Made by a program: the position numbers and the translations under genes. DNA of 7,520 bases from Salpingoeca rosetta (lineage: Eukaryota; Protista; Choanoflagellata). Shown here one piece after another: positions 1 through 7,520 of this stretch. The notes under the pieces were generated by a model. The model worked only from the letters and a program-made list of their open reading frames with translations. It was not told where the DNA came from and did no database searches. Position 1 is the stretch's first letter, and each line of letters begins with the position of its first letter. The DNA lies in assembly GCA_033442325.1 (NCBI GenBank), contig JAWQFM010000042.1:1-7520 (forward strand), written 5' to 3'.

Positions 1-54
<54 letters not shown>
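1..54. repeat. (AC)27 microsatellite, truncated by the window edge
   Basis: Read directly from the sequence. Confidence 0.97.
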
Positions 55-55
<1 letters not shown>

Positions 56-59
56 ATAC
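1..59 (-). other. Intron 2 of DUF547 gene (5' part)
   Basis: Donor GTATGG immediately after the codons for CGAR, followed by (GT)n to the window edge. Confidence 0.85.
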
Positions 60-283
60 CCGTGCGCCGCAGACGAGGGCAAAGTGGATACGGTGGTCAA
101 AGCGTGTGGGCAGGAAGGCGACGCGAGGATCAGACGTTGGCCAGAACGTCCGCCGCTTGGAGGAGGGGTGCGCCCGGTTGCCTGCGGGCGAGGGAGGGTA
201 TCATGACGAGTTGAGTGCAGTCGCTCACATCAACACAAATGGATGCACACGACCAGACAGACAGACAGACAGACAGACACACC

Positions 284-344
<61 letters not shown>

Positions 345-896
345 ACACACCAACACAGATACAACCTTCCCACCACACACCCTACCCAACTGACATCGAA
401 GGATGCCGTGCTCCATGTCGTCGAGGGAGAAAAAGTGATCGCCGATGAGGTAGCCGTAGGTGCTCCAGAACTTTGGAACCGTGAGCACGCCGGAGAAGCG
501 GTCGCCGCCCAAGTGGATGATCGCGTGCACGGTGGCCATGTTGTACACGTTGATGAAGAGGGCCATGGTTTCGTCGTGCGAGAGCTGGCTCAGCTGCAGC
601 GACTGCAGTTGGAACGCAATCGCCTTCCAGTTGACAAACGCGTCGCTGTTCGCCACTGCAGTGTAGTCCACGCGGTTCCGGCCCTTCACGTGGTGTGCCA
701 GTACAGCGTCTGCGACCTGGCACACGCGCTGCACAAACTCGGAGCCCGTGCAGGACCGGCCGAGCTTGGGCACGTTGACGTCCATGGACGCGTCTGCGCC
801 GGCTGCGCGGGTGTGCGCCGCAGTGTTGAGCGGGACGTGCGATGCCCGAAATGGGCGGGACAGCCACCCCCATGCCTGCGACAGCAGCGCCATCAT
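60..896 (-). CDS. DUF547 domain-containing protein, 5' part (exon 1 896-395, exon 2 181-60; continues beyond the left edge)
   Basis: Exon 1 encodes VDYTAV, LSHDETMALFINVYNMATVHA and YLIGDHFFSLDDMEHGILR. Splicing 394-182 (GTCAGT..CCGCAG, phase 1) continues in frame as CNRAHPSSKRRTFWPTSDPRVAFLPTRFDHRIHFALVCGAR, followed by donor GTATGG at 59. These match the DUF547 motifs AFWINxYN, SLDDIEHxILR and DPRIHFALxC. First in-frame ATG is 896; the ORF track start at 938 is GTG, and an in-frame TAA lies at 1031-1029. Confidence 0.9.
182..394 (-). other. Intron 1 of DUF547 gene (213 nt, GT-AG)
   Basis: Donor GTCAGT at 394 and acceptor CCGCAG ending at 182. Removal restores the HGILR-CN motif. The intron contains an in-frame TGA (227-225) and (GT)n/(TCTG)n tracts. 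Confidence 0.88.
254..350. repeat. Compound microsatellite (CAGA)6 + (AC)27 with imperfect extension
   Basis: CAGA units 254-277 and perfect AC 285-338; intronic. Confidence 0.95.
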
Positions 897-1082
897 CCAC
901 GCGACCACCGACCCCACACTCAACCAAAGCCGCGCCACTTTCGGCTGTTTTGTCGATGTGCGGTATGGAAGGCGCTTTGGTTTGCTTTTGTTTGTGCTTG
1001 TGCGTCTTTGTGTTGATGTTGCCGAAATTTATGGCAAGGCACGGTAATTCTTCCCAACTTGCACCACACGACGACGACGACG
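897..1082. promoter_or_regulatory. Putative bidirectional promoter / 5' UTRs between DUF547 and TFB1M
   Basis: Only 186 nt separate the divergent ATGs (896 minus, 1083 plus). Positional inference; no specific element identified. Confidence 0.55.
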
Positions 1083-1197
1083 ATGAAGCTGCCACCTGTG
1101 CCTTCAGTTGCGCAGCTGCTAAGGTTGTATGGCGTGAGAGCGCTGAAGGACCTGAGCCAGAACTTCCTCCTCGACCCCTCCATCACAGGTTGTGCAG

Positions 1198-1228
<31 letters not shown>

Positions 1229-1295
1229 AACGTACGTGGTGTCATTGCCTTGTCCCAACTGTTCAGCCTTTCCACCCCCACATCTAACACACACA

Positions 1296-1347
<52 letters not shown>

Positions 1348-1855
1348 TAAGTTTGTGAGGCATGCTGGGAAGTTGAAGGACAAAGTGGTGATTGAGGTTG
1401 GTGGCGGGCCTGGAAGCCTCACTCGATCAATCCTCAAGGCACAACCAAGGAAGCTCTATGTCATCGAGAAGGACACGCGCATGCTGCCCATGCTCGACGT
1501 AAGAGGTCAATGTGAATGTGTCACTTTGTGGTTTCGCGTGCTTCCGCGTGCATCTCGTACACAATCACCACATGCTCGTGGAATGACCACCATGCACTTG
1601 CTGCTGTGGCATCTTTTTGTGCAGTTGGTGGCGGAAGCGTCAGGCGGTGTGGCAGAGATTATCCCTGGCGACGCACTGCACATTGACTACGAGCAGCTCA
1701 TCACCCAAGCAAACGTCGCCACTCAACGTGAGTGCGCCTTGTTTGGCATGCCTCTTTCTCCTTCCCCATTTCCTACCTCATTCCTTCTGCCACGCTCACC
1801 CACGATCACACGCTCACCCACACCCTCTTCCTCTCTCACCCACGCTCACCCACGA

Positions 1856-1925
<70 letters not shown>

Positions 1926-2552
1926 CCCCCCCCCTTTGCCACTGCAGCCACGGCAGCAGAGGGTGCGGATTCATCAGCAGCTGCGCCGGCGGAAACAGAC
2001 TTGCACATCATCGGCAACCTCCCCTTTGGCATCGCCACGCCCCTGATTCTCTCATACCTGCGGCAGCTGTCGAGGCGTGACAGCGCGTTTGCCAGGAGCC
2101 GCCCGACACTCACGCTGTGCTTCCAGCGCGAGGTGGGCGAGCGCATATGTGCACCGCCGCGCACGAAGCCGCGCAGCCGCATCTCCGTCATCTCCCAGCT
2201 GTACGCCGATGTGCGCCCTGCGTTTGTGATCCCGAGCACGGCGTTCGTTCCCGCGCCAAAGGTGGAGGCCATGGTGGTGTCGTTTCGCCCTCGCGAGCAG
2301 CTACCGGAGGGCCTGGAACAACTGACGTTTGACCAGATGGAGCGCGTGCTCCGGATTGGATACGGCTCCAGGCTGAAGCGGCTGCGCCACGTGTTTTCTA
2401 AGCACGTGGGCGGCTTGCAGGCGGCAGATGACATGCTGGCGTCGGCCGGGTTCCCCGCGGAAACACGCGCGTTCTTCCTGTCCACACGCCAGTGGATTGA
2501 CCTCGCCACCGCCTTTTACCAGCACCAAAGCGCGGACGGTGGCGGAGGGTGA
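1083..2552 (+). CDS. TFB1M: Mitochondrial dimethyladenosine transferase 1 / mtTFB1 (KsgA/Dim1 family), 321 aa; exons 1083-1188, 1347-1498, 1625-1727, 1948-2552
   Basis: Spliced protein: MKLPPVPSVAQLLRLYGVRALKDLSQNFLLDPSITDKFVRHAG..VIEVGGGPGSLTRSIL..VIEKDTR..IIPGDAL..LHIIGNLPFGIATPLI..LTLCFQREVGERICA..RSRISVISQ..IPSTAFVPAPKVE. It has the QNFL, SAM-binding ExGxGxG, NLPF, QxEV and FVPxPKV motifs. LPPxP, LSQNFLLD and GNLPF are TFB1M-type rather than nuclear DIM1. Exon lengths 106+152+103+605 = 966 nt, all junctions GT-AG and phase-consistent. The exon 4 start is the least certain boundary. Confidence 0.93.
1202..1228. repeat. (GT)13 microsatellite
   Basis: Read directly; near the 5' end of intron 1. 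Confidence 0.95.
1287..1345. repeat. (AC)n microsatellite (perfect (AC)21 at 1303-1344)
   Basis: Read directly; abuts the acceptor AG. Confidence 0.95.
1499..1624 (+). other. TFB1M intron 2 (126 nt, phase 0)
   Basis: GTAAGA..TCTTTTTGTGCAG; removal gives MLPMLD-LVAEASGG, matching TFB1M spacing between EKD and the GD motif. Confidence 0.85.
1728..1947 (+). other. TFB1M intron 3 (220 nt, phase 1)
   Basis: Donor GTGAGT; C/T tract then ACTGCAG. Required to move from the exon 3 frame into the IIGNLPF frame. Confidence 0.82.
1790..1922. repeat. 22-nt direct repeat CCACGCTCACCCACGATCACAC (1790-1811, 1840-1861) followed by (CA)33
   Basis: Read directly within intron 3. Confidence 0.9.
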
Positions 2553-2989: not shown

Positions 2990-2993
<4 letters not shown>

Positions 2994-3030
<37 letters not shown>

Positions 3031-3054
3031 CACACCACACAAACACACAACACA
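2994..3054. repeat. (CA)18 microsatellite with degenerate extension
   Basis: Perfect CA at 2994-3029; lies just 3' of the propeller gene stop, where it reads (TG)n on the sense strand. Confidence 0.93.
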
Positions 3055-3063
3055 CGTCCACGT

Positions 3064-4386
3064 TCAGCAGCTTGGATCGATGGCGAGCACAGTGTCCATG
3101 AAGCGCGGGATGCCGTAGATGAGGCCGTTTGGAGCGACCACGCCGTCAAACCATTTGAAAGACCCATCGAGCCCGCTAATTGTTGTTGTGTCGGAGGTGT
3201 TGGTGGCCGGGTCGAAGATGAAGGCGGACGGTGAGCTGAAGGGGATGCCGATGATGTTGCCGTTGGGAGCAAGCACGCCGCCACTCCATTTCGTGGACTG
3301 CGTTTGCTCGGCGATGTCAATCGTGTCTGCGTTGTTGGTGGCTGGGTCAATGACGAGCATGCTTGAGCTCTCCGCGGGGATGCTGTAGATGAGGCCGTTG
3401 CCCGCAAGCACCGCCCCGCGCCACTTGTACGGTACAGCGCCCAGGCCTTGGATCGTGGTCAGGTCCATGGTGAGGGAGGCGGGGTCGATGATGAGGACGG
3501 CAGCAGCCAGGGACGGCATGCAGTAAACGAGGCCGTTGGGAGCTTGCGCACCGCCATACCACTTGTCACTGTCCGTGGACAGGCCGGACAAGGTTGTGTT
3601 GTCGGCCGTGTTGGTTGCTGGATCGACGAGGAGCACGGATGTCGCATCGCGTGGAATGCCGAGGACGAGCCCGTCGCTTGTCACCAGGCCGCTGTACCAC
3701 TTGTAGCCGTTGGAATCAAGGGTATCGACGCTCGTGGTGTCGGTCGCGTTGGTGGCGGGGTCGACGATGAGCACGGCCGTTGCGGAGTATGGGAACATGT
3801 ACACGAGCCCGTTGTGTGCCAGGACGGCGCCAGCCCACTTGAGCTTTTGCAACCCAAGCCCCGCGATGGTGGTCGTGTCGACGGTGTTGGTGCTGGGGTC
3901 GATGATGAGAACCGCGTCTGCGTTGAACGGAGCGGCGTAGATCAGGCCGTTGTCGGCCAGCGCCGCACCCACCCACTTGTTGCCCGACGTGCCGACCTCT
4001 TCTTGCCCGAACGTGGTCGCACTTGCATGGCACACCCTGCCTCGGAGCGCAGCCACTTGGTACTGCTGTGCGTCAACCGTGCTCTGCTGCGCATCGAGGG
4101 TGCTCTGCTGCGCCTGCACCGCTTGCTTGTGCTCCCGCAGCGTGCTCTGCTGCGCCACCACTGCCTCAAACAGCGCGTCCACGCTCACGCCGTTCAGGAA
4201 CACGGGTTGCGTGTTCGGATCGCTCGTGTTGATGTGGAATACACCCGCATCATCCTCCGCCAACACCGCCTCCCCCAAGCAGCCATGCTGCAACTGCAAT
4301 TGCAACAACACCAAGGCAGCGACGCTGGCGGCGATCAGCACCACGCTCCTCGCCAAGAGCCGTGATGGAAGAGGAGCTGTCGTCAT
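3064..4386 (-). CDS. Secreted/surface protein, 440 aa: signal peptide, coiled coil, seven-bladed beta-propeller repeats; single exon; function unknown
   Basis: First ATG at 4386 (the track start 4455 is GTG). Hydrophobic N-terminus SVVLIAASVAALVLL. Heptad AQQSTLD repeats. Seven repeats of KWxG(A/G)VLAxNGL(I/V)YxxPxxAxxVLIIDPATNTxDTTTIxGL with the Lys codons at 3978, 3840, 3702, 3564, 3426, 3291 and 3156 (138/135-nt period). TGA at 3066-3064. The propeller fold is inferred from repeat length and strand pattern. Confidence 0.88.
   Translation of the reverse strand: MTTAPLPSRLLARSVVLIAASVAALVLLQLQLQHGCLGEAVLAEDDAGVFHINTSDPNTQPVFLNGVSVDALFEAVVAQQSTLREHKQAVQAQQSTLDAQQSTVDAQQYQVAALRGRVCHASATTFGQEEVGTSGNKWVGAALADNGLIYAAPFNADAVLIIDPSTNTVDTTTIAGLGLQKLKWAGAVLAHNGLVYMFPYSATAVLIVDPATNATDTTSVDTLDSNGYKWYSGLVTSDGLVLGIPRDATSVLLVDPATNTADNTTLSGLSTDSDKWYGGAQAPNGLVYCMPSLAAAVLIIDPASLTMDLTTIQGLGAVPYKWRGAVLAGNGLIYSIPAESSSMLVIDPATNNADTIDIAEQTQSTKWSGGVLAPNGNIIGIPFSSPSAFIFDPATNTSDTTTISGLDGSFKWFDGVVAPNGLIYGIPRFMDTVLAIDPSC
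3067..3978 (-). repeat. Seven coding tandem repeats of 45-46 aa (propeller blades; the last is truncated)
   Basis: Invariant KW, (N/D)G, P and DP at fixed spacing in all seven units. Confidence 0.9.
4079..4155 (-). repeat. 21-nt-period coding repeat (AQQST heptads, coiled coil)
   Basis: GTGCTCTGCTGCGC at 4079, 4100 and 4142 (spacing 21 and 42). Confidence 0.85.
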
Positions 4387-4567
4387 GAGGAGCGAGCAGG
4401 TGCGAACAATCAATCCACGTGCGAGTGCAGAAAAGTGGAACAAGATAAGCAACACTTTTCCTTAGTGTGATGTGAGTGATGTGAGTTGTGGTGATTGGAG
4501 TGAGTTGTGATTGCGGCCTTCCCTCTCAGTTCCCTTCCTTCCTTCCCCCTCTTGCTAACCTCCCTTC
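4387..4567. promoter_or_regulatory. Putative bidirectional promoter between the propeller gene and the LRR-like gene
   Basis: 181 nt between divergent ATGs; clustered GTGA-core direct repeats 4467-4513, ATTGG (reverse CCAAT) 4494-4498 and a pyrimidine tract 4517-4567. Confidence 0.5.
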
Positions 4568-7027
4568 ATGAACGCCTCAGCGCTGGTGCTGGTGGCTGAG
4601 TGGCTGGTGCGCTCAGCACAATCAGCGACACAATCACCGACACAATCACCGACACAATCAGCGACACAATCAGCGGCGAGAACAGTCAGCTGTGACATGT
4701 GCGGTGATGATGACGCTATCAAGAGCAGGACAGAGTGCAGCAGGTACCTCGACTACGCCTTTGAGCCACCGGCTGAGGATGTGCTGCGCGACGTTCTGCG
4801 CACCTTCACCAACCTCATGCTGACCTGTCGCGAGCTGTACCACGACTTGCCGTGGGCCATGCCAAAGTGGTGCTTCGCCGAGGCGTTTGAGTTGGGTCCT
4901 GAAACGTGGGATCAGCGCGTTCAAACTATCGTGCACTGGCTCGACACCTTCCAAGTGCAGCAGCAGCAGGGAGAGGTGGATATGGAAATGACGAAGGAGA
5001 TGGAAGAGGCGGAGATGGTGGAAGAGGCGGAAATCATGGAGGAGGGCGTCTGTTCGGCTTCTGCCACGTGGCTGGAAACCCGCTTTCTCGTGTATGCGTG
5101 GCTGGGGGCAACGTGGAGCTCCGAAGGCACGTTCCTGCGTTCGAAGCTGCTAACGGCGTCCTCCTCGGCACCAGGAGGCAAGAACAGCCGCGCCTTCTGG
5201 CGCACGTTTACACACTGCGGACGCGTGTGGTTTGCTTCTCTGCAGGACTTGCAGTCCTGGGCTGCTGCCGCTGCCGCCGCGTCTGTGAGTTCACGGCGCA
5301 CGATGCGACAAACACACGCAGCACGAGCTGAAGGACCTGCCAGAACTACACAGGCACTTCCAGCGACGAGTAGAAAAGAGCACGAGAAGGAACAGGAGCA
5401 GGATGAAGAAGGACAAACAGAACGCAAAGGGGAGCAGCAAGAACAAGCAGAGCACGACCATGACCACGACCCGCAACACCACCACCACGACGACGACCCC
5501 CACCACGACGACGACGACCACCACGACCACCACGACCACCACCACCAGCAGCAGCGAGCACCTGCACTGTTCTCGCTCGTGGCAGTGTTGAACAGTCAGG
5601 CCGACGCCGATCAGTGGCACGAGCTGCGCGCAACGTTGCTGGGCAATGCAAGGGGGCACGACGTATGCCTGTGTGCACAGGAACCATTGGATTCCCTGAT
5701 GGTGAGCCACGTTGACAGTCTCGAGCTTCAGTCCGCTGACATCAACCACGCCACGTTCCATGACGTGCGGTGCATCGAGTGGTGGTACCAGGGGCAGCAG
5801 CAAGCGCTCCAGGCCACCTTCCACACTGTTTCACGCTGTGCCATCGACAACGGCGTAGCCCTTGTCAATGTCAGTCCTCTTGCGGCTGTCCCCGATGTGA
5901 GCATCTCGTGCACCCACAACCACCCTGTCGACTTGTCGCCACTCCGCGGCGTGCAGAACTTACGCGTCAACAAAACGCTTGTGGTTGCAGAGGAAGCACT
6001 TTCCACAGCGCAGCGCGTTGACCTGCACCGAGTCGCGCTCACCGCGGACACGCTCCATGCCGCACATGTCAAGCTGTCCCGCATGACTACGTTGCCTGAC
6101 ATGTTGCACCTTCCACGGGCCACCCATGTTGAGCTAGAAGACATGGGACCTGTGCCGAAGCTGCTAACTTGCCCGCCTCACCTTGACCAGCTTGTCGTTG
6201 ATGGCACGTCGTCACTTGTCCTTCCGACCATTCCCGACTTTGAGCACGCACATATCTTGGTGCTCAAGCTCCGTTCAAGGACAGCGTTCACACGTGAGCG
6301 GCTGGCGGACCTCAGCCGCCGTGCCTGCAAACTAGTGCTCAGCGGCTGTGTGACAAACGTCACCGACTTGCACGATATTCCTGACGACGTACAGGTGTCG
6401 GTGGAGCACGTCGAGAGGGTGGACGGAGCCGTCCCACCCTGTGTCACAACGTTGCATGTTCGCTTCAACGGTGAACTGCACTGCAAACACCTGGGCACGG
6501 TGCCATGCCTGGCCCTTCACGCGAGCGGCCACGACCTGATTCACGACTTCCAACTCTTGTCTGGTCGGAGGTGTCTTCACCTGAACGAATGCACGCTCGC
6601 TGGCGAGGTTGCACGCTGCCAGTACCTGGTGCTGAACAGGTGCTGCGGGTGCGGTGCGTTTGCACACGTTGATTGGCTCGTGATCCACCGCGCAACCGTC
6701 GTCGCATCCCCACCCGAGGTCGGCAACTGCTCCCACCTGCCACTTGATGACAGCGACTTGAGCATCGCGCATTGTCGTGCGGTGTTCCAGTGCCACCTCC
6801 GATGGTGCCGCATCAAAGACTTTGCTTGCTTCGAAGGCGTGCAGCGTCTCGTCTTGAAGAACTGCTACTTTGACAAGCTGGAAAGCCTTCCGCACATCGG
6901 GTGCGTCGTCCTGCGCCGTTGCTCCACCACAGACAGGCGTTGGCGCTGGCCAGACCGTGTTCTCGTCAATCGATCCCCACAGGAGATGAGGTCGGCGCTG
7001 CTAGCTGGCAAGGTGAAGAGCGGGTAA
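4568..7027 (+). CDS. Hypothetical 819-aa protein with degenerate leucine-rich-repeat-like C-terminal half and possible divergent N-terminal F-box
   Basis: Uninterrupted 2460-nt ATG..TAA ORF. LRR-like units include VNVSPLAAVPDVSISC, VDLSPLRGVQNLRV, IHDFQLLSGRRCLHLNEC, IKDFACFEGVQRLVLKNC and LESLPHIGCVVLRRC. No signal peptide evident. Coding status is well supported; the domain calls are by eye. Confidence 0.75.
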   Translation: MNASALVLVAEWLVRSAQSATQSPTQSPTQSATQSAARTVSCDMCGDDDAIKSRTECSRYLDYAFEPPAEDVLRDVLRTFTNLMLTCRELYHDLPWAMPKWCFAEAFELGPETWDQRVQTIVHWLDTFQVQQQQGEVDMEMTKEMEEAEMVEEAEIMEEGVCSASATWLETRFLVYAWLGATWSSEGTFLRSKLLTASSSAPGGKNSRAFWRTFTHCGRVWFASLQDLQSWAAAAAAASVSSRRTMRQTHAARAEGPARTTQALPATSRKEHEKEQEQDEEGQTERKGEQQEQAEHDHDHDPQHHHHDDDPHHDDDDHHDHHDHHHQQQRAPALFSLVAVLNSQADADQWHELRATLLGNARGHDVCLCAQEPLDSLMVSHVDSLELQSADINHATFHDVRCIEWWYQGQQQALQATFHTVSRCAIDNGVALVNVSPLAAVPDVSISCTHNHPVDLSPLRGVQNLRVNKTLVVAEEALSTAQRVDLHRVALTADTLHAAHVKLSRMTTLPDMLHLPRATHVELEDMGPVPKLLTCPPHLDQLVVDGTSSLVLPTIPDFEHAHILVLKLRSRTAFTRERLADLSRRACKLVLSGCVTNVTDLHDIPDDVQVSVEHVERVDGAVPPCVTTLHVRFNGELHCKHLGTVPCLALHASGHDLIHDFQLLSGRRCLHLNECTLAGEVARCQYLVLNRCCGCGAFAHVDWLVIHRATVVASPPEVGNCSHLPLDDSDLSIAHCRAVFQCHLRWCRIKDFACFEGVQRLVLKNCYFDKLESLPHIGCVVLRRCSTTDRRWRWPDRVLVNRSPQEMRSALLAGKVKSG
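4617..4675 (+). repeat. 12-bp coding minisatellite x5 (CACAATCA[G/C]CGA) encoding TQS(A/P)
   Basis: Units at 4617, 4629, 4641, 4653 and 4665. Confidence 0.92.
5453..5554 (+). repeat. (CAC/GAC)n trinucleotide low-complexity tract encoding a His/Asp-rich segment followed by QQQ
   Basis: HDHDHDPQHHHHDDDPHHDDDDHHDHHDHHHQQQ. Confidence 0.88.
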
Positions 7028-7062
7028 AGACGGGGAGTGTTGGGGAGGGGGTTGAGTGTTGT

Positions 7063-7064
<2 letters not shown>

Positions 7065-7150
<86 letters not shown>
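7065..7150. repeat. (TG)43 microsatellite
   Basis: Read directly, just downstream of the stop at 7027. Confidence 0.97.
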
Positions 7151-7151
<1 letters not shown>

Positions 7152-7459
7152 TGGTGCTGCACTTGGCCGTTGATGGCATGTGGATAGAAGGGGTATTTGC
7201 TGACGTGCTGATGATTGGTATAACGGTGATTGCCTTGTTGTGCTTGTGCACGAGAGAGGCGGGTGGTGAGTGGCGTGGTTGTTCTTGTGGCTTATTCAGC
7301 TTTACTTGCTGCGACAGTGTGAAGGAACAGTGAACAGCGTCACGCACATGAGTTGCAAGAATTCACGGAGAGGAAATGAGGGAACAGTGGCTGATGAAAG
7401 CAGGGGGATGGGAGGGATTGAGGCTGCGCAGAAACGCGCGAGCACAGCACATGAACACA

Positions 7460-7520
7460 TCAACACCCCGGATCGATGACGAGCACAGGACTCCGCATTG
7501 GCTGGAATGCCGTAAACTAG
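7460..7520 (-). pseudogene. 3' end of a paralog of the beta-propeller gene with a 1-nt frameshift (pseudogene, altered C-terminus or sequence error); partial at the right edge
   Basis: Minus strand reads CTA GTT TAC GGC ATT CCA GCC AAT GCG GAG TCC [T] GTG CTC GTC ATC GAT CCG GGG TGT TGA = LVYGIPANAES/VLVIDPGC*. This aligns without gaps to LIYGIPRFMDTVLAIDPSC* of the 3064-4386 gene once one base near 7487-7489 is removed. Confidence 0.75.

What the first reader, a model, noticed from the sequence alone, without database searches (positions are those of the whole stretch)
3064..7520. Possible repeated cassette: secreted propeller gene head-to-head with an intracellular F-box/LRR-like gene, followed by a second propeller copy
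Seen: propeller gene (minus), a 181-nt spacer, LRR-like gene (plus), then the tail of another propeller paralog in the same orientation, with stop codons about 4.4 kb apart. Both complete genes are uninterrupted repeat-domain ORFs of no function I can name. Inference: the unit of duplication may be the divergent pair, giving a co-regulated extracellular binder plus intracellular LRR partner. This could be a recognition/immune-like or effector-antidote module, loosely analogous to head-to-head paired NLR loci in plants. Only one full pair is visible, so linkage could be chance.
Basis: partly seen in the sequence, partly recalled or inferred. Interest (0 to 1): 0.75.

Follow-up and report, generated by a model that had tools for sequence, protein, structure and literature searches.

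The report
Loosely linked propeller and LRR genes
In the choanoflagellate Salpingoeca rosetta, genes of two large uncharacterised families, a secreted stalked propeller and a cytosolic LRR-like protein, are neighbours on opposite strands far more often than chance allows, but most copies stand alone, so a working two-gene module is not shown.

Summary
The window is the whole 7.5-kb contig C42 of a Salpingoeca rosetta assembly. It carries an intact propeller gene (3064-4386, minus), a 181-nt spacer, an intact 819-aa LRR-like gene (4568-7027, plus), and the last 20 codons of a second propeller gene (7460-7520, minus). That tail has a 1-base frameshift, and the contig ends there.

I found at least 94 propeller loci and at least 51 LRR-like loci.
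- **Adjacency:** 9 LRR-like loci have a propeller gene within 1.2 kb. A uniform model expects 0.2 and a local-shift model about 2 (0 of 5000 shuffles reach 9).
- **Orientation:** all 11 close junctions are on opposite strands, 5 head-to-head and 6 tail-to-tail.
- **Repeats of the pattern:** C25:461-475 kb shows the same alternating array. One pair (C14/C34) was copied as a unit.
- **Against a fixed module:** about 80-90% of members are solitary, other recent duplications carry one gene only, the two gene trees disagree, and LRR-like genes also sit next to TPR genes.

No F-box was detected, and co-regulation or an immune role is untested. This scan had already noted these families and their neighbourhoods on other DNA of this genome.

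The parts
2990..3055 (.). (CA)n microsatellite directly 3' of the propeller stop codon. DNA similarity to many paralogs starts here.
   Evidence: tandem repeats. (many paralog matches begin at 2990).
3064..4386 (-). Propeller gene, 440 aa from the ATG at 4386 with its stop at 3064-3066. The parts are an N-terminal hydrophobic signal-like segment (about 4276-4386), a short beta module, a long helix or coiled-coil stalk (about 4033-4182), and a seven-bladed beta-propeller (about 3067-4023).
   Evidence: ORF. (AlphaFold2 mean pLDDT 89, helix 69-118, 28 blade strands). (Foldseek matches to Vgb lyase, YVTN and WD40 propellers, E about 1e-12). (hydrophobic segment at residues 10-28). (100% self match, best paralog 61%).
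4387..4567 (.). 181-nt head-to-head spacer between the two start codons. It holds no microsatellite and is a candidate shared promoter region (inferred).
4568..7027 (+). LRR-like gene, 819 aa. The parts are a short conserved N-terminal motif, a family-specific tryptophan-rich helical domain (4763-5353), an acidic/His-rich low-complexity linker (about 5354-5557), and a C-terminal LRR solenoid (about 5558-7024).
   Evidence: ORF. (family alignments). (pLDDT about 90 over residues 330-819, low over 1-160 and 255-326). (Foldseek: TLR, COI1 and TIR1 solenoids, E 2e-3 and weaker). (family profile against internalin LRRs, E 9e-6).
7028..7459 (.). Tail-to-tail spacer of 432 nt holding (TG)43 at 7065-7150.
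7460..7520 (-). The last 20 codons of a second propeller paralog, cut by the contig end. It carries a 1-base frameshift at about 7487, between ...GIPANAES and VLVIDPGC-stop.
   Evidence: One search gives the family consensus C-terminus.

Best explanation
The window holds one and a bit units of an alternating, opposite-strand array built from two intronless multigene families of Salpingoeca rosetta.

**Family 1 (at least 94 loci).** It encodes probably secreted proteins with a signal-like N-terminus, a coiled-coil stalk and a seven-bladed propeller head. The head is related to bacterial DUF5074/DUF6923 and YVTN-type surface propellers. These are most likely extracellular binding proteins.

**Family 2 (at least 51 loci, found only in S. 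rosetta).** It encodes proteins with no signal or membrane segment. They have a family-specific N-terminal helical domain, a low-complexity linker and a cysteine-containing LRR solenoid of the kind seen in cytosolic F-box/LRR and NLR proteins. These are most likely intracellular interaction scaffolds.

**My reading of the linkage.** I think it is real but loose. Both families expand by local birth-and-death duplication in the same gene neighbourhoods, mainly on contigs C4 and C25. An old propeller(-)/LRR(+) arrangement has been copied, broken and recombined. Sometimes the pair moves together and more often one gene moves alone. Exchange between paralogs scrambles the histories.

**Status of each step.** Shown: adjacency, orientation, the extent of the duplicated stretches, the folds. 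Inferred: secretion, trimer formation, cytosolic location, common descent of the arrangement. Untested: a shared promoter and any functional coupling.
For: **Family sizes.**, merged, give 94 propeller loci and 51 LRR-like loci.

**Adjacency.** 9 LRR-like loci have a propeller within 1.2 kb and 13 within 5 kb. Uniform placement expects 0.21 and 0.86. Shifting each LRR locus by 30-150 kb on its own contig gives means of 1.8 and 3.7, and 0 of 5000 shuffles reach the observed counts.

**Independent check.** Profile scans of the 1.5-kb flanks find the other family in 5 of 30 propeller loci and 5 of 30 LRR loci.

**Orientation.** The 11 junctions of 1.2 kb or less are 5 divergent, 6 convergent and 0 same-strand. 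C25:461-475 kb repeats the window's alternating layout.

**Extent of duplications.**
- The C14/C34 pair was copied together, including the spacer, at 92-97% identity.
- The C25 tandem block of spacer plus LRR 5' end is 97.7% identical.
- The C2/C12 LRR genes, the C25/C10 LRR genes and the C4 propellers at 1799k/369k were each copied alone.

**Mosaic genes.** The two C25 LRR proteins are identical over about 296 residues and roughly 20-50% identical (mostly under 40%) afterwards. The N-domain tree differs from the whole-protein tree.

**Proteins.** Searches cover the propeller. Searches cover the LRR-like protein. One search covers the hydrophobic segments. In one search only 28 library representatives reach E 1e-30. 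All 10 weaker or partial relatives I sampled are S. rosetta proteins.
Against: - A purely neutral account does not by itself predict 11 of 11 opposite-strand junctions.
- It also does not predict an excess over the local-shift null.
- The block homogenised between the two C25 units is centred on a head-to-head spacer. That could reflect selection on a shared control region.
- The catalogues are lower bounds, because the search tool scores only the best candidates.
- I could examine only 1.5-kb flanks.
- Contig lengths are unknown, so enrichment at contig ends could not be tested.
Confidence: 0.55

Rival explanations
1. The head-to-head pair shares a bidirectional promoter. It co-expresses an extracellular binder with an intracellular LRR partner that work together, for example as sensor plus regulator in the manner of paired NLR genes.
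For: - Adjacency exceeds both null models.
- Close junctions are strictly opposite-strand.
- The window's spacer is short, at 181 nt.
- One pair was duplicated as a unit with its spacer.
- On C25 the spacer plus the LRR 5' end is kept 97.7% identical while the rest of the genes has diverged.
Against: - 42 of 51 LRR-like loci and about 85 of 94 propeller loci have no partner within 1.2 kb.
- 6 of 11 junctions are tail-to-tail, which cannot share a promoter.
- The closest paralogs of paired genes are unpaired, and those duplications exclude the partner.
- Tree tests reject matching histories: p-AU 9e-8 and 6e-4, with the groups named after I had seen the trees.
- LRR-like genes are just as often next to TPR_12 genes, in 4 of 30 loci.
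- A secreted protein and a cytosolic protein have no evident way to meet.
Confidence: 0.25
2. This is pure regional co-enrichment. Both families simply pile up in the same fast-changing regions, and adjacency carries no further meaning, either historical or functional.
For: - C4 holds 38 of the 94 propeller loci and 8 of the 51 LRR loci. C25 holds 13 and 7.
- The local-shift null (1.8-2.7) is about ten times the uniform expectation (0.21), so regional clustering is strong.
- Other expanded families, such as TPR_12 genes, are interleaved.
Against: - The observed 9 still exceeds the local nulls (0 to 2 of 5000 shuffles reach it).
- Pairs also occur on contigs that hold only 1 to 4 propeller loci: C2, C34, C14 and C42.
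- All 11 close junctions are opposite-strand.
Confidence: 0.15
3. This is an assembly artefact. The short contig, the repeated family and the frameshifted tail would come from mis-assembly of paralogs.
For: The contig is only 7520 bases and ends inside a family member. The tail has a 1-base frameshift.
Against: - Both complete genes are intact and unique. The best paralogs are 61% and 44% identical in protein and about 70% in DNA.
- The left part holds single-copy housekeeping genes.
- The same layout exists inside large contigs.
Confidence: 0.03

Closest known systems
Head-to-head paired NLR resistance genes of plants (for example RGA4/RGA5 and RRS1/RPS4; recalled from my own knowledge)
   Same: Two repeat-protein genes sit on opposite strands with a short shared upstream region. 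Both belong to expanded, diversifying families, and the pair is sometimes duplicated together.
   Different: Neither gene has an NB-ARC domain. One product is secreted. Most family members are unpaired, half of the junctions are tail-to-tail, and the partner trees are not congruent.
F-box/LRR proteins with cysteine-containing LRRs (Skp2, TIR1, COI1, the FBXL type)
   Same: The protein is cytosolic with a C-terminal LRR solenoid. Foldseek lists COI1 and TIR1. Distant S. rosetta relatives match the LRR_At1g61320_AtMIF1 and LRR_RPS2 models. The language-model neighbours of the N-terminal domain are F-box clusters, at scores of 0.79-0.84, which count only as leads.
   Different: No F-box is detected by Pfam in any member. 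None of the roughly 30 F-box matches in the genome lies in an LRR-like locus. The N-terminal domain is a family-specific tryptophan-rich module with no match to any solved structure.
DUF5074/DUF6923 and YVTN-type seven-bladed surface propellers of bacteria and archaea, and virginiamycin B lyase
   Same: The fold is the same (Foldseek TM about 0.8 by target, E about 1e-12). Paralogs score above the Pfam cut-offs for DUF5074 and DUF6923. Close sequence relatives occur in Leptospiraceae and other bacteria.
   Different: Here the propeller follows a eukaryotic signal-like segment and a coiled-coil stalk, and it has expanded to about 100 intronless copies in a choanoflagellate. The window's own copy matches no Pfam model.
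Collectins, ficolins and similar stalked lectins
   Same: The design is the same: signal peptide, self-associating helical stalk and C-terminal binding head, encoded by a multigene family.
   Different: The head is a beta-propeller rather than a C-type lectin or fibrinogen domain. There is no collagen region. Oligomer state and ligand are unknown.

Membership tests
Seven-bladed beta-propeller, DUF5074/DUF6923 (YVTN-like) group | Seven four-stranded blades forming a closed propeller | tested here: met
   The AlphaFold2 model has mean pLDDT 89 and 28 blade strands over residues 138-437. Foldseek matches seven-bladed propellers at E about 1e-12. The alignment shows seven sequence repeats of about 46 aa.
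Seven-bladed beta-propeller, DUF5074/DUF6923 (YVTN-like) group | A match to the Pfam models above their gathering score | tested here: inconclusive
   The window's protein matches neither model. Paralogs do: L023 scores 49.3 bits for DUF5074 and 36.6 bits for DUF6923, against cut-offs of about 27. Many homologs carry PF21959 or PF16819.
Leucine-rich repeat proteins | Tandem LRR motifs folding into a curved solenoid | tested here: met
   Residues 330-819 are modelled as a beta-rich solenoid at pLDDT about 90. The Foldseek top hits are all LRR solenoids, though weak (E 2e-3 and weaker, TM 0.2-0.3). The family profile matches internalin LRRs at E 9e-6. Generic LRR proteins match profile positions 360-435 several times each. 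No Pfam LRR model matches the window's protein itself.
F-box proteins | An F-box motif of about 45 aa (PF00646 or PF12937) | tested here: not met
   No match in the window's protein at E up to 1, in 29 family members, or in 20 isolated N-terminal domains at E up to 10. Genome-wide F-box matches lie outside all LRR-like loci. Only weak language-model leads point to an F-box.
F-box proteins | Binding to Skp1 | not testable with these tools
   This needs a binding assay or a confident complex model.
Paired head-to-head NLR loci | Both partners carry an NB-ARC or NACHT domain | tested here: not met
   No such domain is found in either protein or in either family.
Paired head-to-head NLR loci | Partners are inherited and duplicated together, giving congruent trees | tested here: not met
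   Only C14/C34 and part of the C25 tandem were co-duplicated. Other duplications carry a single gene. Tree tests reject matching groupings. Recombination between paralogs weakens this test.
Toxin-antidote or effector-immunity gene pairs | Near-obligate tight linkage of the two genes in nearly all copies | tested here: not met
   Only 9 of 51 LRR-like loci and 9 of 94 propeller loci have a partner within 1.2 kb.

The most novel reading that the evidence does not exclude
A subset of these opposite-strand pairs may be true functional units in the closest living relatives of animals. In this reading a secreted, oligomeric propeller binder and a cytosolic LRR scaffold are driven from one short bidirectional control region. 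Exchange between paralogs keeps that control region together with the 5' ends of both genes. This would be a previously unknown paired recognition and response system that evolved independently of NLR pairs.
Probability: 0.12. Interest if true: 0.8.

Novelty: new variant of a known kind. Interest (0 to 1): 0.45.

Why it matters
Choanoflagellates are the sister group of animals and live by capturing and sensing bacteria. Two large, diversifying, intronless families of repeat proteins that sit together non-randomly are natural candidates for recognition functions that pre-date or parallel animal innate immunity. One family is extracellular and the other cytosolic.

Neither family appears in the papers I could search. 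The LRR-like family has no relatives outside S. rosetta in a library of 1.8 billion proteins, apart from generic LRR matches.

The result here also sets a limit. The pair is not a fixed module, so claims of an 'immune cassette' need expression and genetic tests first.

Tried and rejected
- **Extending the window to the right.** This is impossible, because the window is the whole contig and no other contig overlaps its ends.
- **Fetching 10-kb contexts of all pairs.** Contexts were therefore limited to the 1.5-kb flanks of loci L001-L060.
- **F-box.** I sought it five ways and did not find it. A UniRef 'F-box' label on the distant relative PTSG_11466 was not confirmed by Pfam, and its similarity is confined to the LRR part.
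- **The N-terminal domain against solved structures.** No match at E up to 10. The Atlas structure rows were all below TM 0.45.
- **A third recurrent partner gene.** Only TPR_12-type genes recur next to LRR-like genes, in 4 of 30 loci. Other recurring flank segments looked like conserved non-coding or shadow frames.
- **Literature.** Searches on the family names and on six PTSG identifiers found nothing on these families.
- **Chance and mis-assembly.** I rejected chance because. I rejected mis-assembly because.
- **Enrichment at contig ends.** Many loci carry the highest coordinate seen on their contig. I could not test this because contig lengths are not available.
Full report
**What is in the window**

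The 7520 bases are the whole of contig C42 of a 55.4-Mb, 68-contig eukaryotic assembly. The organism is Salpingoeca rosetta. Family members translated from other contigs begin with the same N-terminal residues as, or align closely to, annotated PTSG_ proteins.

The left 3 kb holds a DUF547 gene fragment and an rRNA adenine dimethylase gene split by introns rich in CA repeats. I scanned those open frames one at a time by reference and did not join any exons.

The finding covers the rest:
- a propeller gene at 3064-4386 on the minus strand (the open frame runs up to a GTG at 4455; the conserved start is the ATG at 4386);
- a 181-nt spacer;
- an 819-aa gene at 4568-7027 on the plus strand;
- a 432-nt spacer with (TG)43;
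- the last 20 codons of another propeller gene at 7460-7520 on the minus strand.

The tail reads ...GIPANAES, then one extra base, then VLVIDPGC-stop. VLVIDPGC is the family's consensus C-terminus. The second copy is therefore real, but as assembled it is frameshifted. The two stop codons are 4396 bases apart.

**The propeller protein**

AlphaFold2, run with 43 aligned relatives, gives mean pLDDT 89. The model has an N-terminal helix over a hydrophobic segment, two short strands, a 50-residue helix (residues 69-118) and seven four-stranded blades.

Foldseek finds seven-bladed propellers at E about 1e-12. They include virginiamycin B lyase, an archaeal YVTN surface-layer domain, the leptospiral antigen Lp49 and WD40 domains.

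The window's copy matches no Pfam model. Paralogs pass the cut-offs for DUF5074 and DUF6923. The word search finds 246 relatives, including proteins of Leptospiraceae and other bacteria.

Nearly every paralog has one hydrophobic segment of about 20 residues near the N-terminus, followed by a conserved G-E-V motif. The family also keeps a cysteine at the start of the propeller and another as the last residue. I infer from this that the protein is secreted. Trimer formation by the stalk is also an inference.

**The LRR-like protein**

Pfam gives nothing beyond low-complexity noise, either for this protein or for 28 relatives. The family alignment shows four parts:
- a short conserved N-terminal motif;
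- a strongly conserved tryptophan-rich domain of about 190 residues;
- a low-complexity linker (His/Asp-rich here, poly-Q in many paralogs);
- a domain of about 490 residues with many conserved leucines and cysteines.

The last domain is modelled as a solenoid at pLDDT about 90. The N-terminal third is poorly modelled.

Foldseek's best rows are all LRR solenoids, namely TLR9, TLR13, COI1 and TIR1, but they are weak (E 2e-3 and weaker). The family profile matches internalin LRRs at E 9e-6. More distant S. rosetta relatives match the LRR models of plant F-box/LRR and RPS2-type proteins.

No member has a signal-like or membrane-like hydrophobic stretch within its conserved regions. A cytosolic location is therefore a fair inference.

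Pfam finds none at E up to 10 on isolated N-terminal domains. None of the roughly 30 F-box matches in the genome lies in an LRR-like locus. Only language-model neighbours at 0.79-0.84 point to F-box clusters, and the tool rates such scores as leads only.

In a full HMMER search of 1.8 billion representatives, 28 proteins reach E 1e-30. Below about 1e-24 nearly all matches are short, repeated LRR matches. All ten weaker or partial relatives that I looked up are S. rosetta proteins. The family looks specific to this lineage.

**Are the two families linked?**

Protein and profile searches of the genome, merged, give 94 propeller loci and 51 LRR-like loci. These are lower bounds, because the tool scores only the best candidates.

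| Distance to a propeller gene | LRR-like loci observed | Uniform expectation | Local-shift mean (30-150 kb) | Shuffles reaching observed |
|---|---|---|---|---|
| within 1.2 kb | 9 | 0.21 | 1.8 | 0 of 5000 |
| within 5 kb | 13 | 0.86 | 3.7 | 0 of 5000 |

With shifts of 10-50 kb the means are 2.7 and 5.3, and 2 and 1 shuffles of 5000 reach the observed counts. Regional clustering is therefore strong: contig C4 alone has 38 propeller loci. Immediate adjacency still exceeds it.

An independent check agrees. Profile scans of the 1.5-kb flanks find the other family in 5 of 30 propeller loci and in 5 of 30 LRR loci.

**Orientation and layout**

Counting the window's tail, there are 11 propeller/LRR junctions with gaps of 1.2 kb or less. 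Five are head-to-head (gaps 115-991 nt), six are tail-to-tail (435-776 nt), and none is same-strand. The chance of 11 out of 11 is about 5e-4 if the junctions are independent, and about 2e-3 to 4e-3 if evident duplicates are counted once.

Same-strand pairs appear only at 2.5 kb or more. In two of those cases a TPR_12 gene lies between the two genes.

C25:461-475 kb reads propeller(-), propeller(-), LRR(+), propeller(-), LRR(+). This is the same alternating layout as the window, and there the second propeller does have its own head-to-head LRR partner.

**Is the pair the unit of duplication?**

Sometimes it is.
- C14:1311241-1313785 and C34:415332-412673 are 92-97% identical across the propeller gene, the spacer and the LRR gene, as far as my locus reaches. 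The proteins are 98% and 91-93% identical.
- On C25 the two tandem units share a 1.4-kb block at 97.7% identity that covers the spacer and the first 0.85 kb of the LRR gene. The two LRR proteins are identical for about 296 residues and then roughly 20-50% identical (mostly under 40%). This is a clear recombinant or converted block centred on the head-to-head region.

More often it is not.
- The LRR gene of the C2 pair is 87% identical to one on C12.
- The LRR gene of the C25:492k pair is 85% identical to one on C10.
- The propeller of the C4:1799k pair is 80% identical to one at C4:369k.
- In each of these cases the similarity stops 20-50 bp beyond the stop codon, and the partner is absent from the other copy.

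On the trees the 'paired' state needs at least 5 changes among 34 propellers and at least 6 among 33 LRR-like genes.

The window's propeller groups weakly (support 80-81) with C25:315k and with the C14/C34 propellers. The window's LRR gene, in contrast, sits in a well-supported clade of unpaired genes (C2:1470k, C14:1583k, C30:60k, C4:77k).

- Holding the window's LRR gene together with the C14/C34 LRR genes is rejected (p-AU 9e-8).
- Holding the C14/C34 propellers together with the C25:470k propeller is rejected (p-AU 6e-4).

I named both groups after seeing the trees. The N-terminal domain alone gives a different tree from the whole protein. Exchange between paralogs therefore blurs these histories, and incongruence cannot exclude an old common origin of the arrangement.

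**Reading**

The most likely account, which I put at about 55%, has four parts. An old opposite-strand arrangement of the two families exists. Both families grow by birth-and-death duplication in the same neighbourhoods. Pieces of the array are copied with variable end points, and paralogs exchange segments.

A true functional pairing of a subset, through a shared control region, remains possible. I put it at about 25% for any real coupling and at about 12% for the strong version. The orientation rule and the homogenised head-to-head block on C25 speak for it. The solitary majority, the tail-to-tail half of the junctions and the different cellular compartments of the two products speak against it. 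Pure regional co-enrichment (about 15%) and mis-assembly (about 3%) fit the data less well.

**Comparison with known systems**

The locus resembles head-to-head NLR pairs only in layout. The NB-ARC domain and strict co-inheritance were both tested and not met. The LRR domain resembles the cysteine-containing LRRs of F-box/LRR proteins, but the F-box itself was tested and not met. The propeller belongs with the DUF5074/DUF6923 and YVTN-type surface propellers. As a design, signal segment plus stalk plus head recalls collectins and ficolins.

I found no paper on either family.

Earlier notes of this scan, made on other parts of the same genome, describe the propeller family, a TIR-bearing member, and LRR-centred neighbourhoods. 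My counts agree with those notes. I treated them as leads, not as evidence.

**Limits**

I therefore could not read beyond the 1.5-kb flanks, could not obtain contig lengths and could not see official gene models. No expression data were available.

Noticed in passing
window 1-2552: The left part holds single-copy housekeeping genes. One is a DUF547 gene fragment on the minus strand (225-938). The other is an rRNA adenine dimethylase gene on the plus strand, split by at least two introns full of CA/TG repeats. Both family genes next to them are intronless.
   Followed up: partly
window 2990-3055 and 7065-7150, and many paralog loci: A CA/TG microsatellite lies directly after the stop codon of the propeller gene and of the LRR-like gene, and at the same place in many paralogs. 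Duplicated blocks tend to end close to stop codons. The repeats may mark or promote the recombination end points, or they may act as 3' elements.
   Followed up: no
L051 and L035 (C25:466200-475953): Two tandem LRR-like genes are mosaic. Their first 296 or so residues and the upstream spacer are identical or 97.7% identical, and the remaining 500 residues are roughly 20-50% identical (mostly under 40%). The break falls in the low-complexity linker. The upstream propeller copy at C25:465231-466232 matches the family profile only from position 108 and may be truncated at its 5' end.
   Followed up: partly
P0001 (PTSG_02868, probably the gene at C25:316198-317553), the closest paralog of the window's propeller: This 612-aa member has an N-terminal TIR-like match (TIR_2, residues 24-136, E 2e-5, just under the Pfam cut-off) ahead of the propeller. 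This is a receptor-like design. It sits head-to-head with another propeller gene.
   Followed up: partly
L046:1-951, L048:4234-5181, L058:1-918, L059:3803-4732, L021:2-505: Genes with TPR_12 / NPHP3-type repeats lie tail-to-tail next to four LRR-like genes of one clade and next to one propeller gene. This is a third expanded family in the same neighbourhoods.
   Followed up: partly
window 4799-4879: This 81-nt piece of the LRR-like gene encodes the most conserved motif of the N-terminal domain. It stays 83-84% identical in DNA to paralogs whose proteins are otherwise only about 30-40% identical.
   Followed up: no
(coordinates of family loci): Many family loci carry the highest or lowest coordinate seen on their contig, for example on C2, C34, C36, C30, C33, C12 and C10. 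This hints at enrichment near contig or chromosome ends.
   Followed up: no
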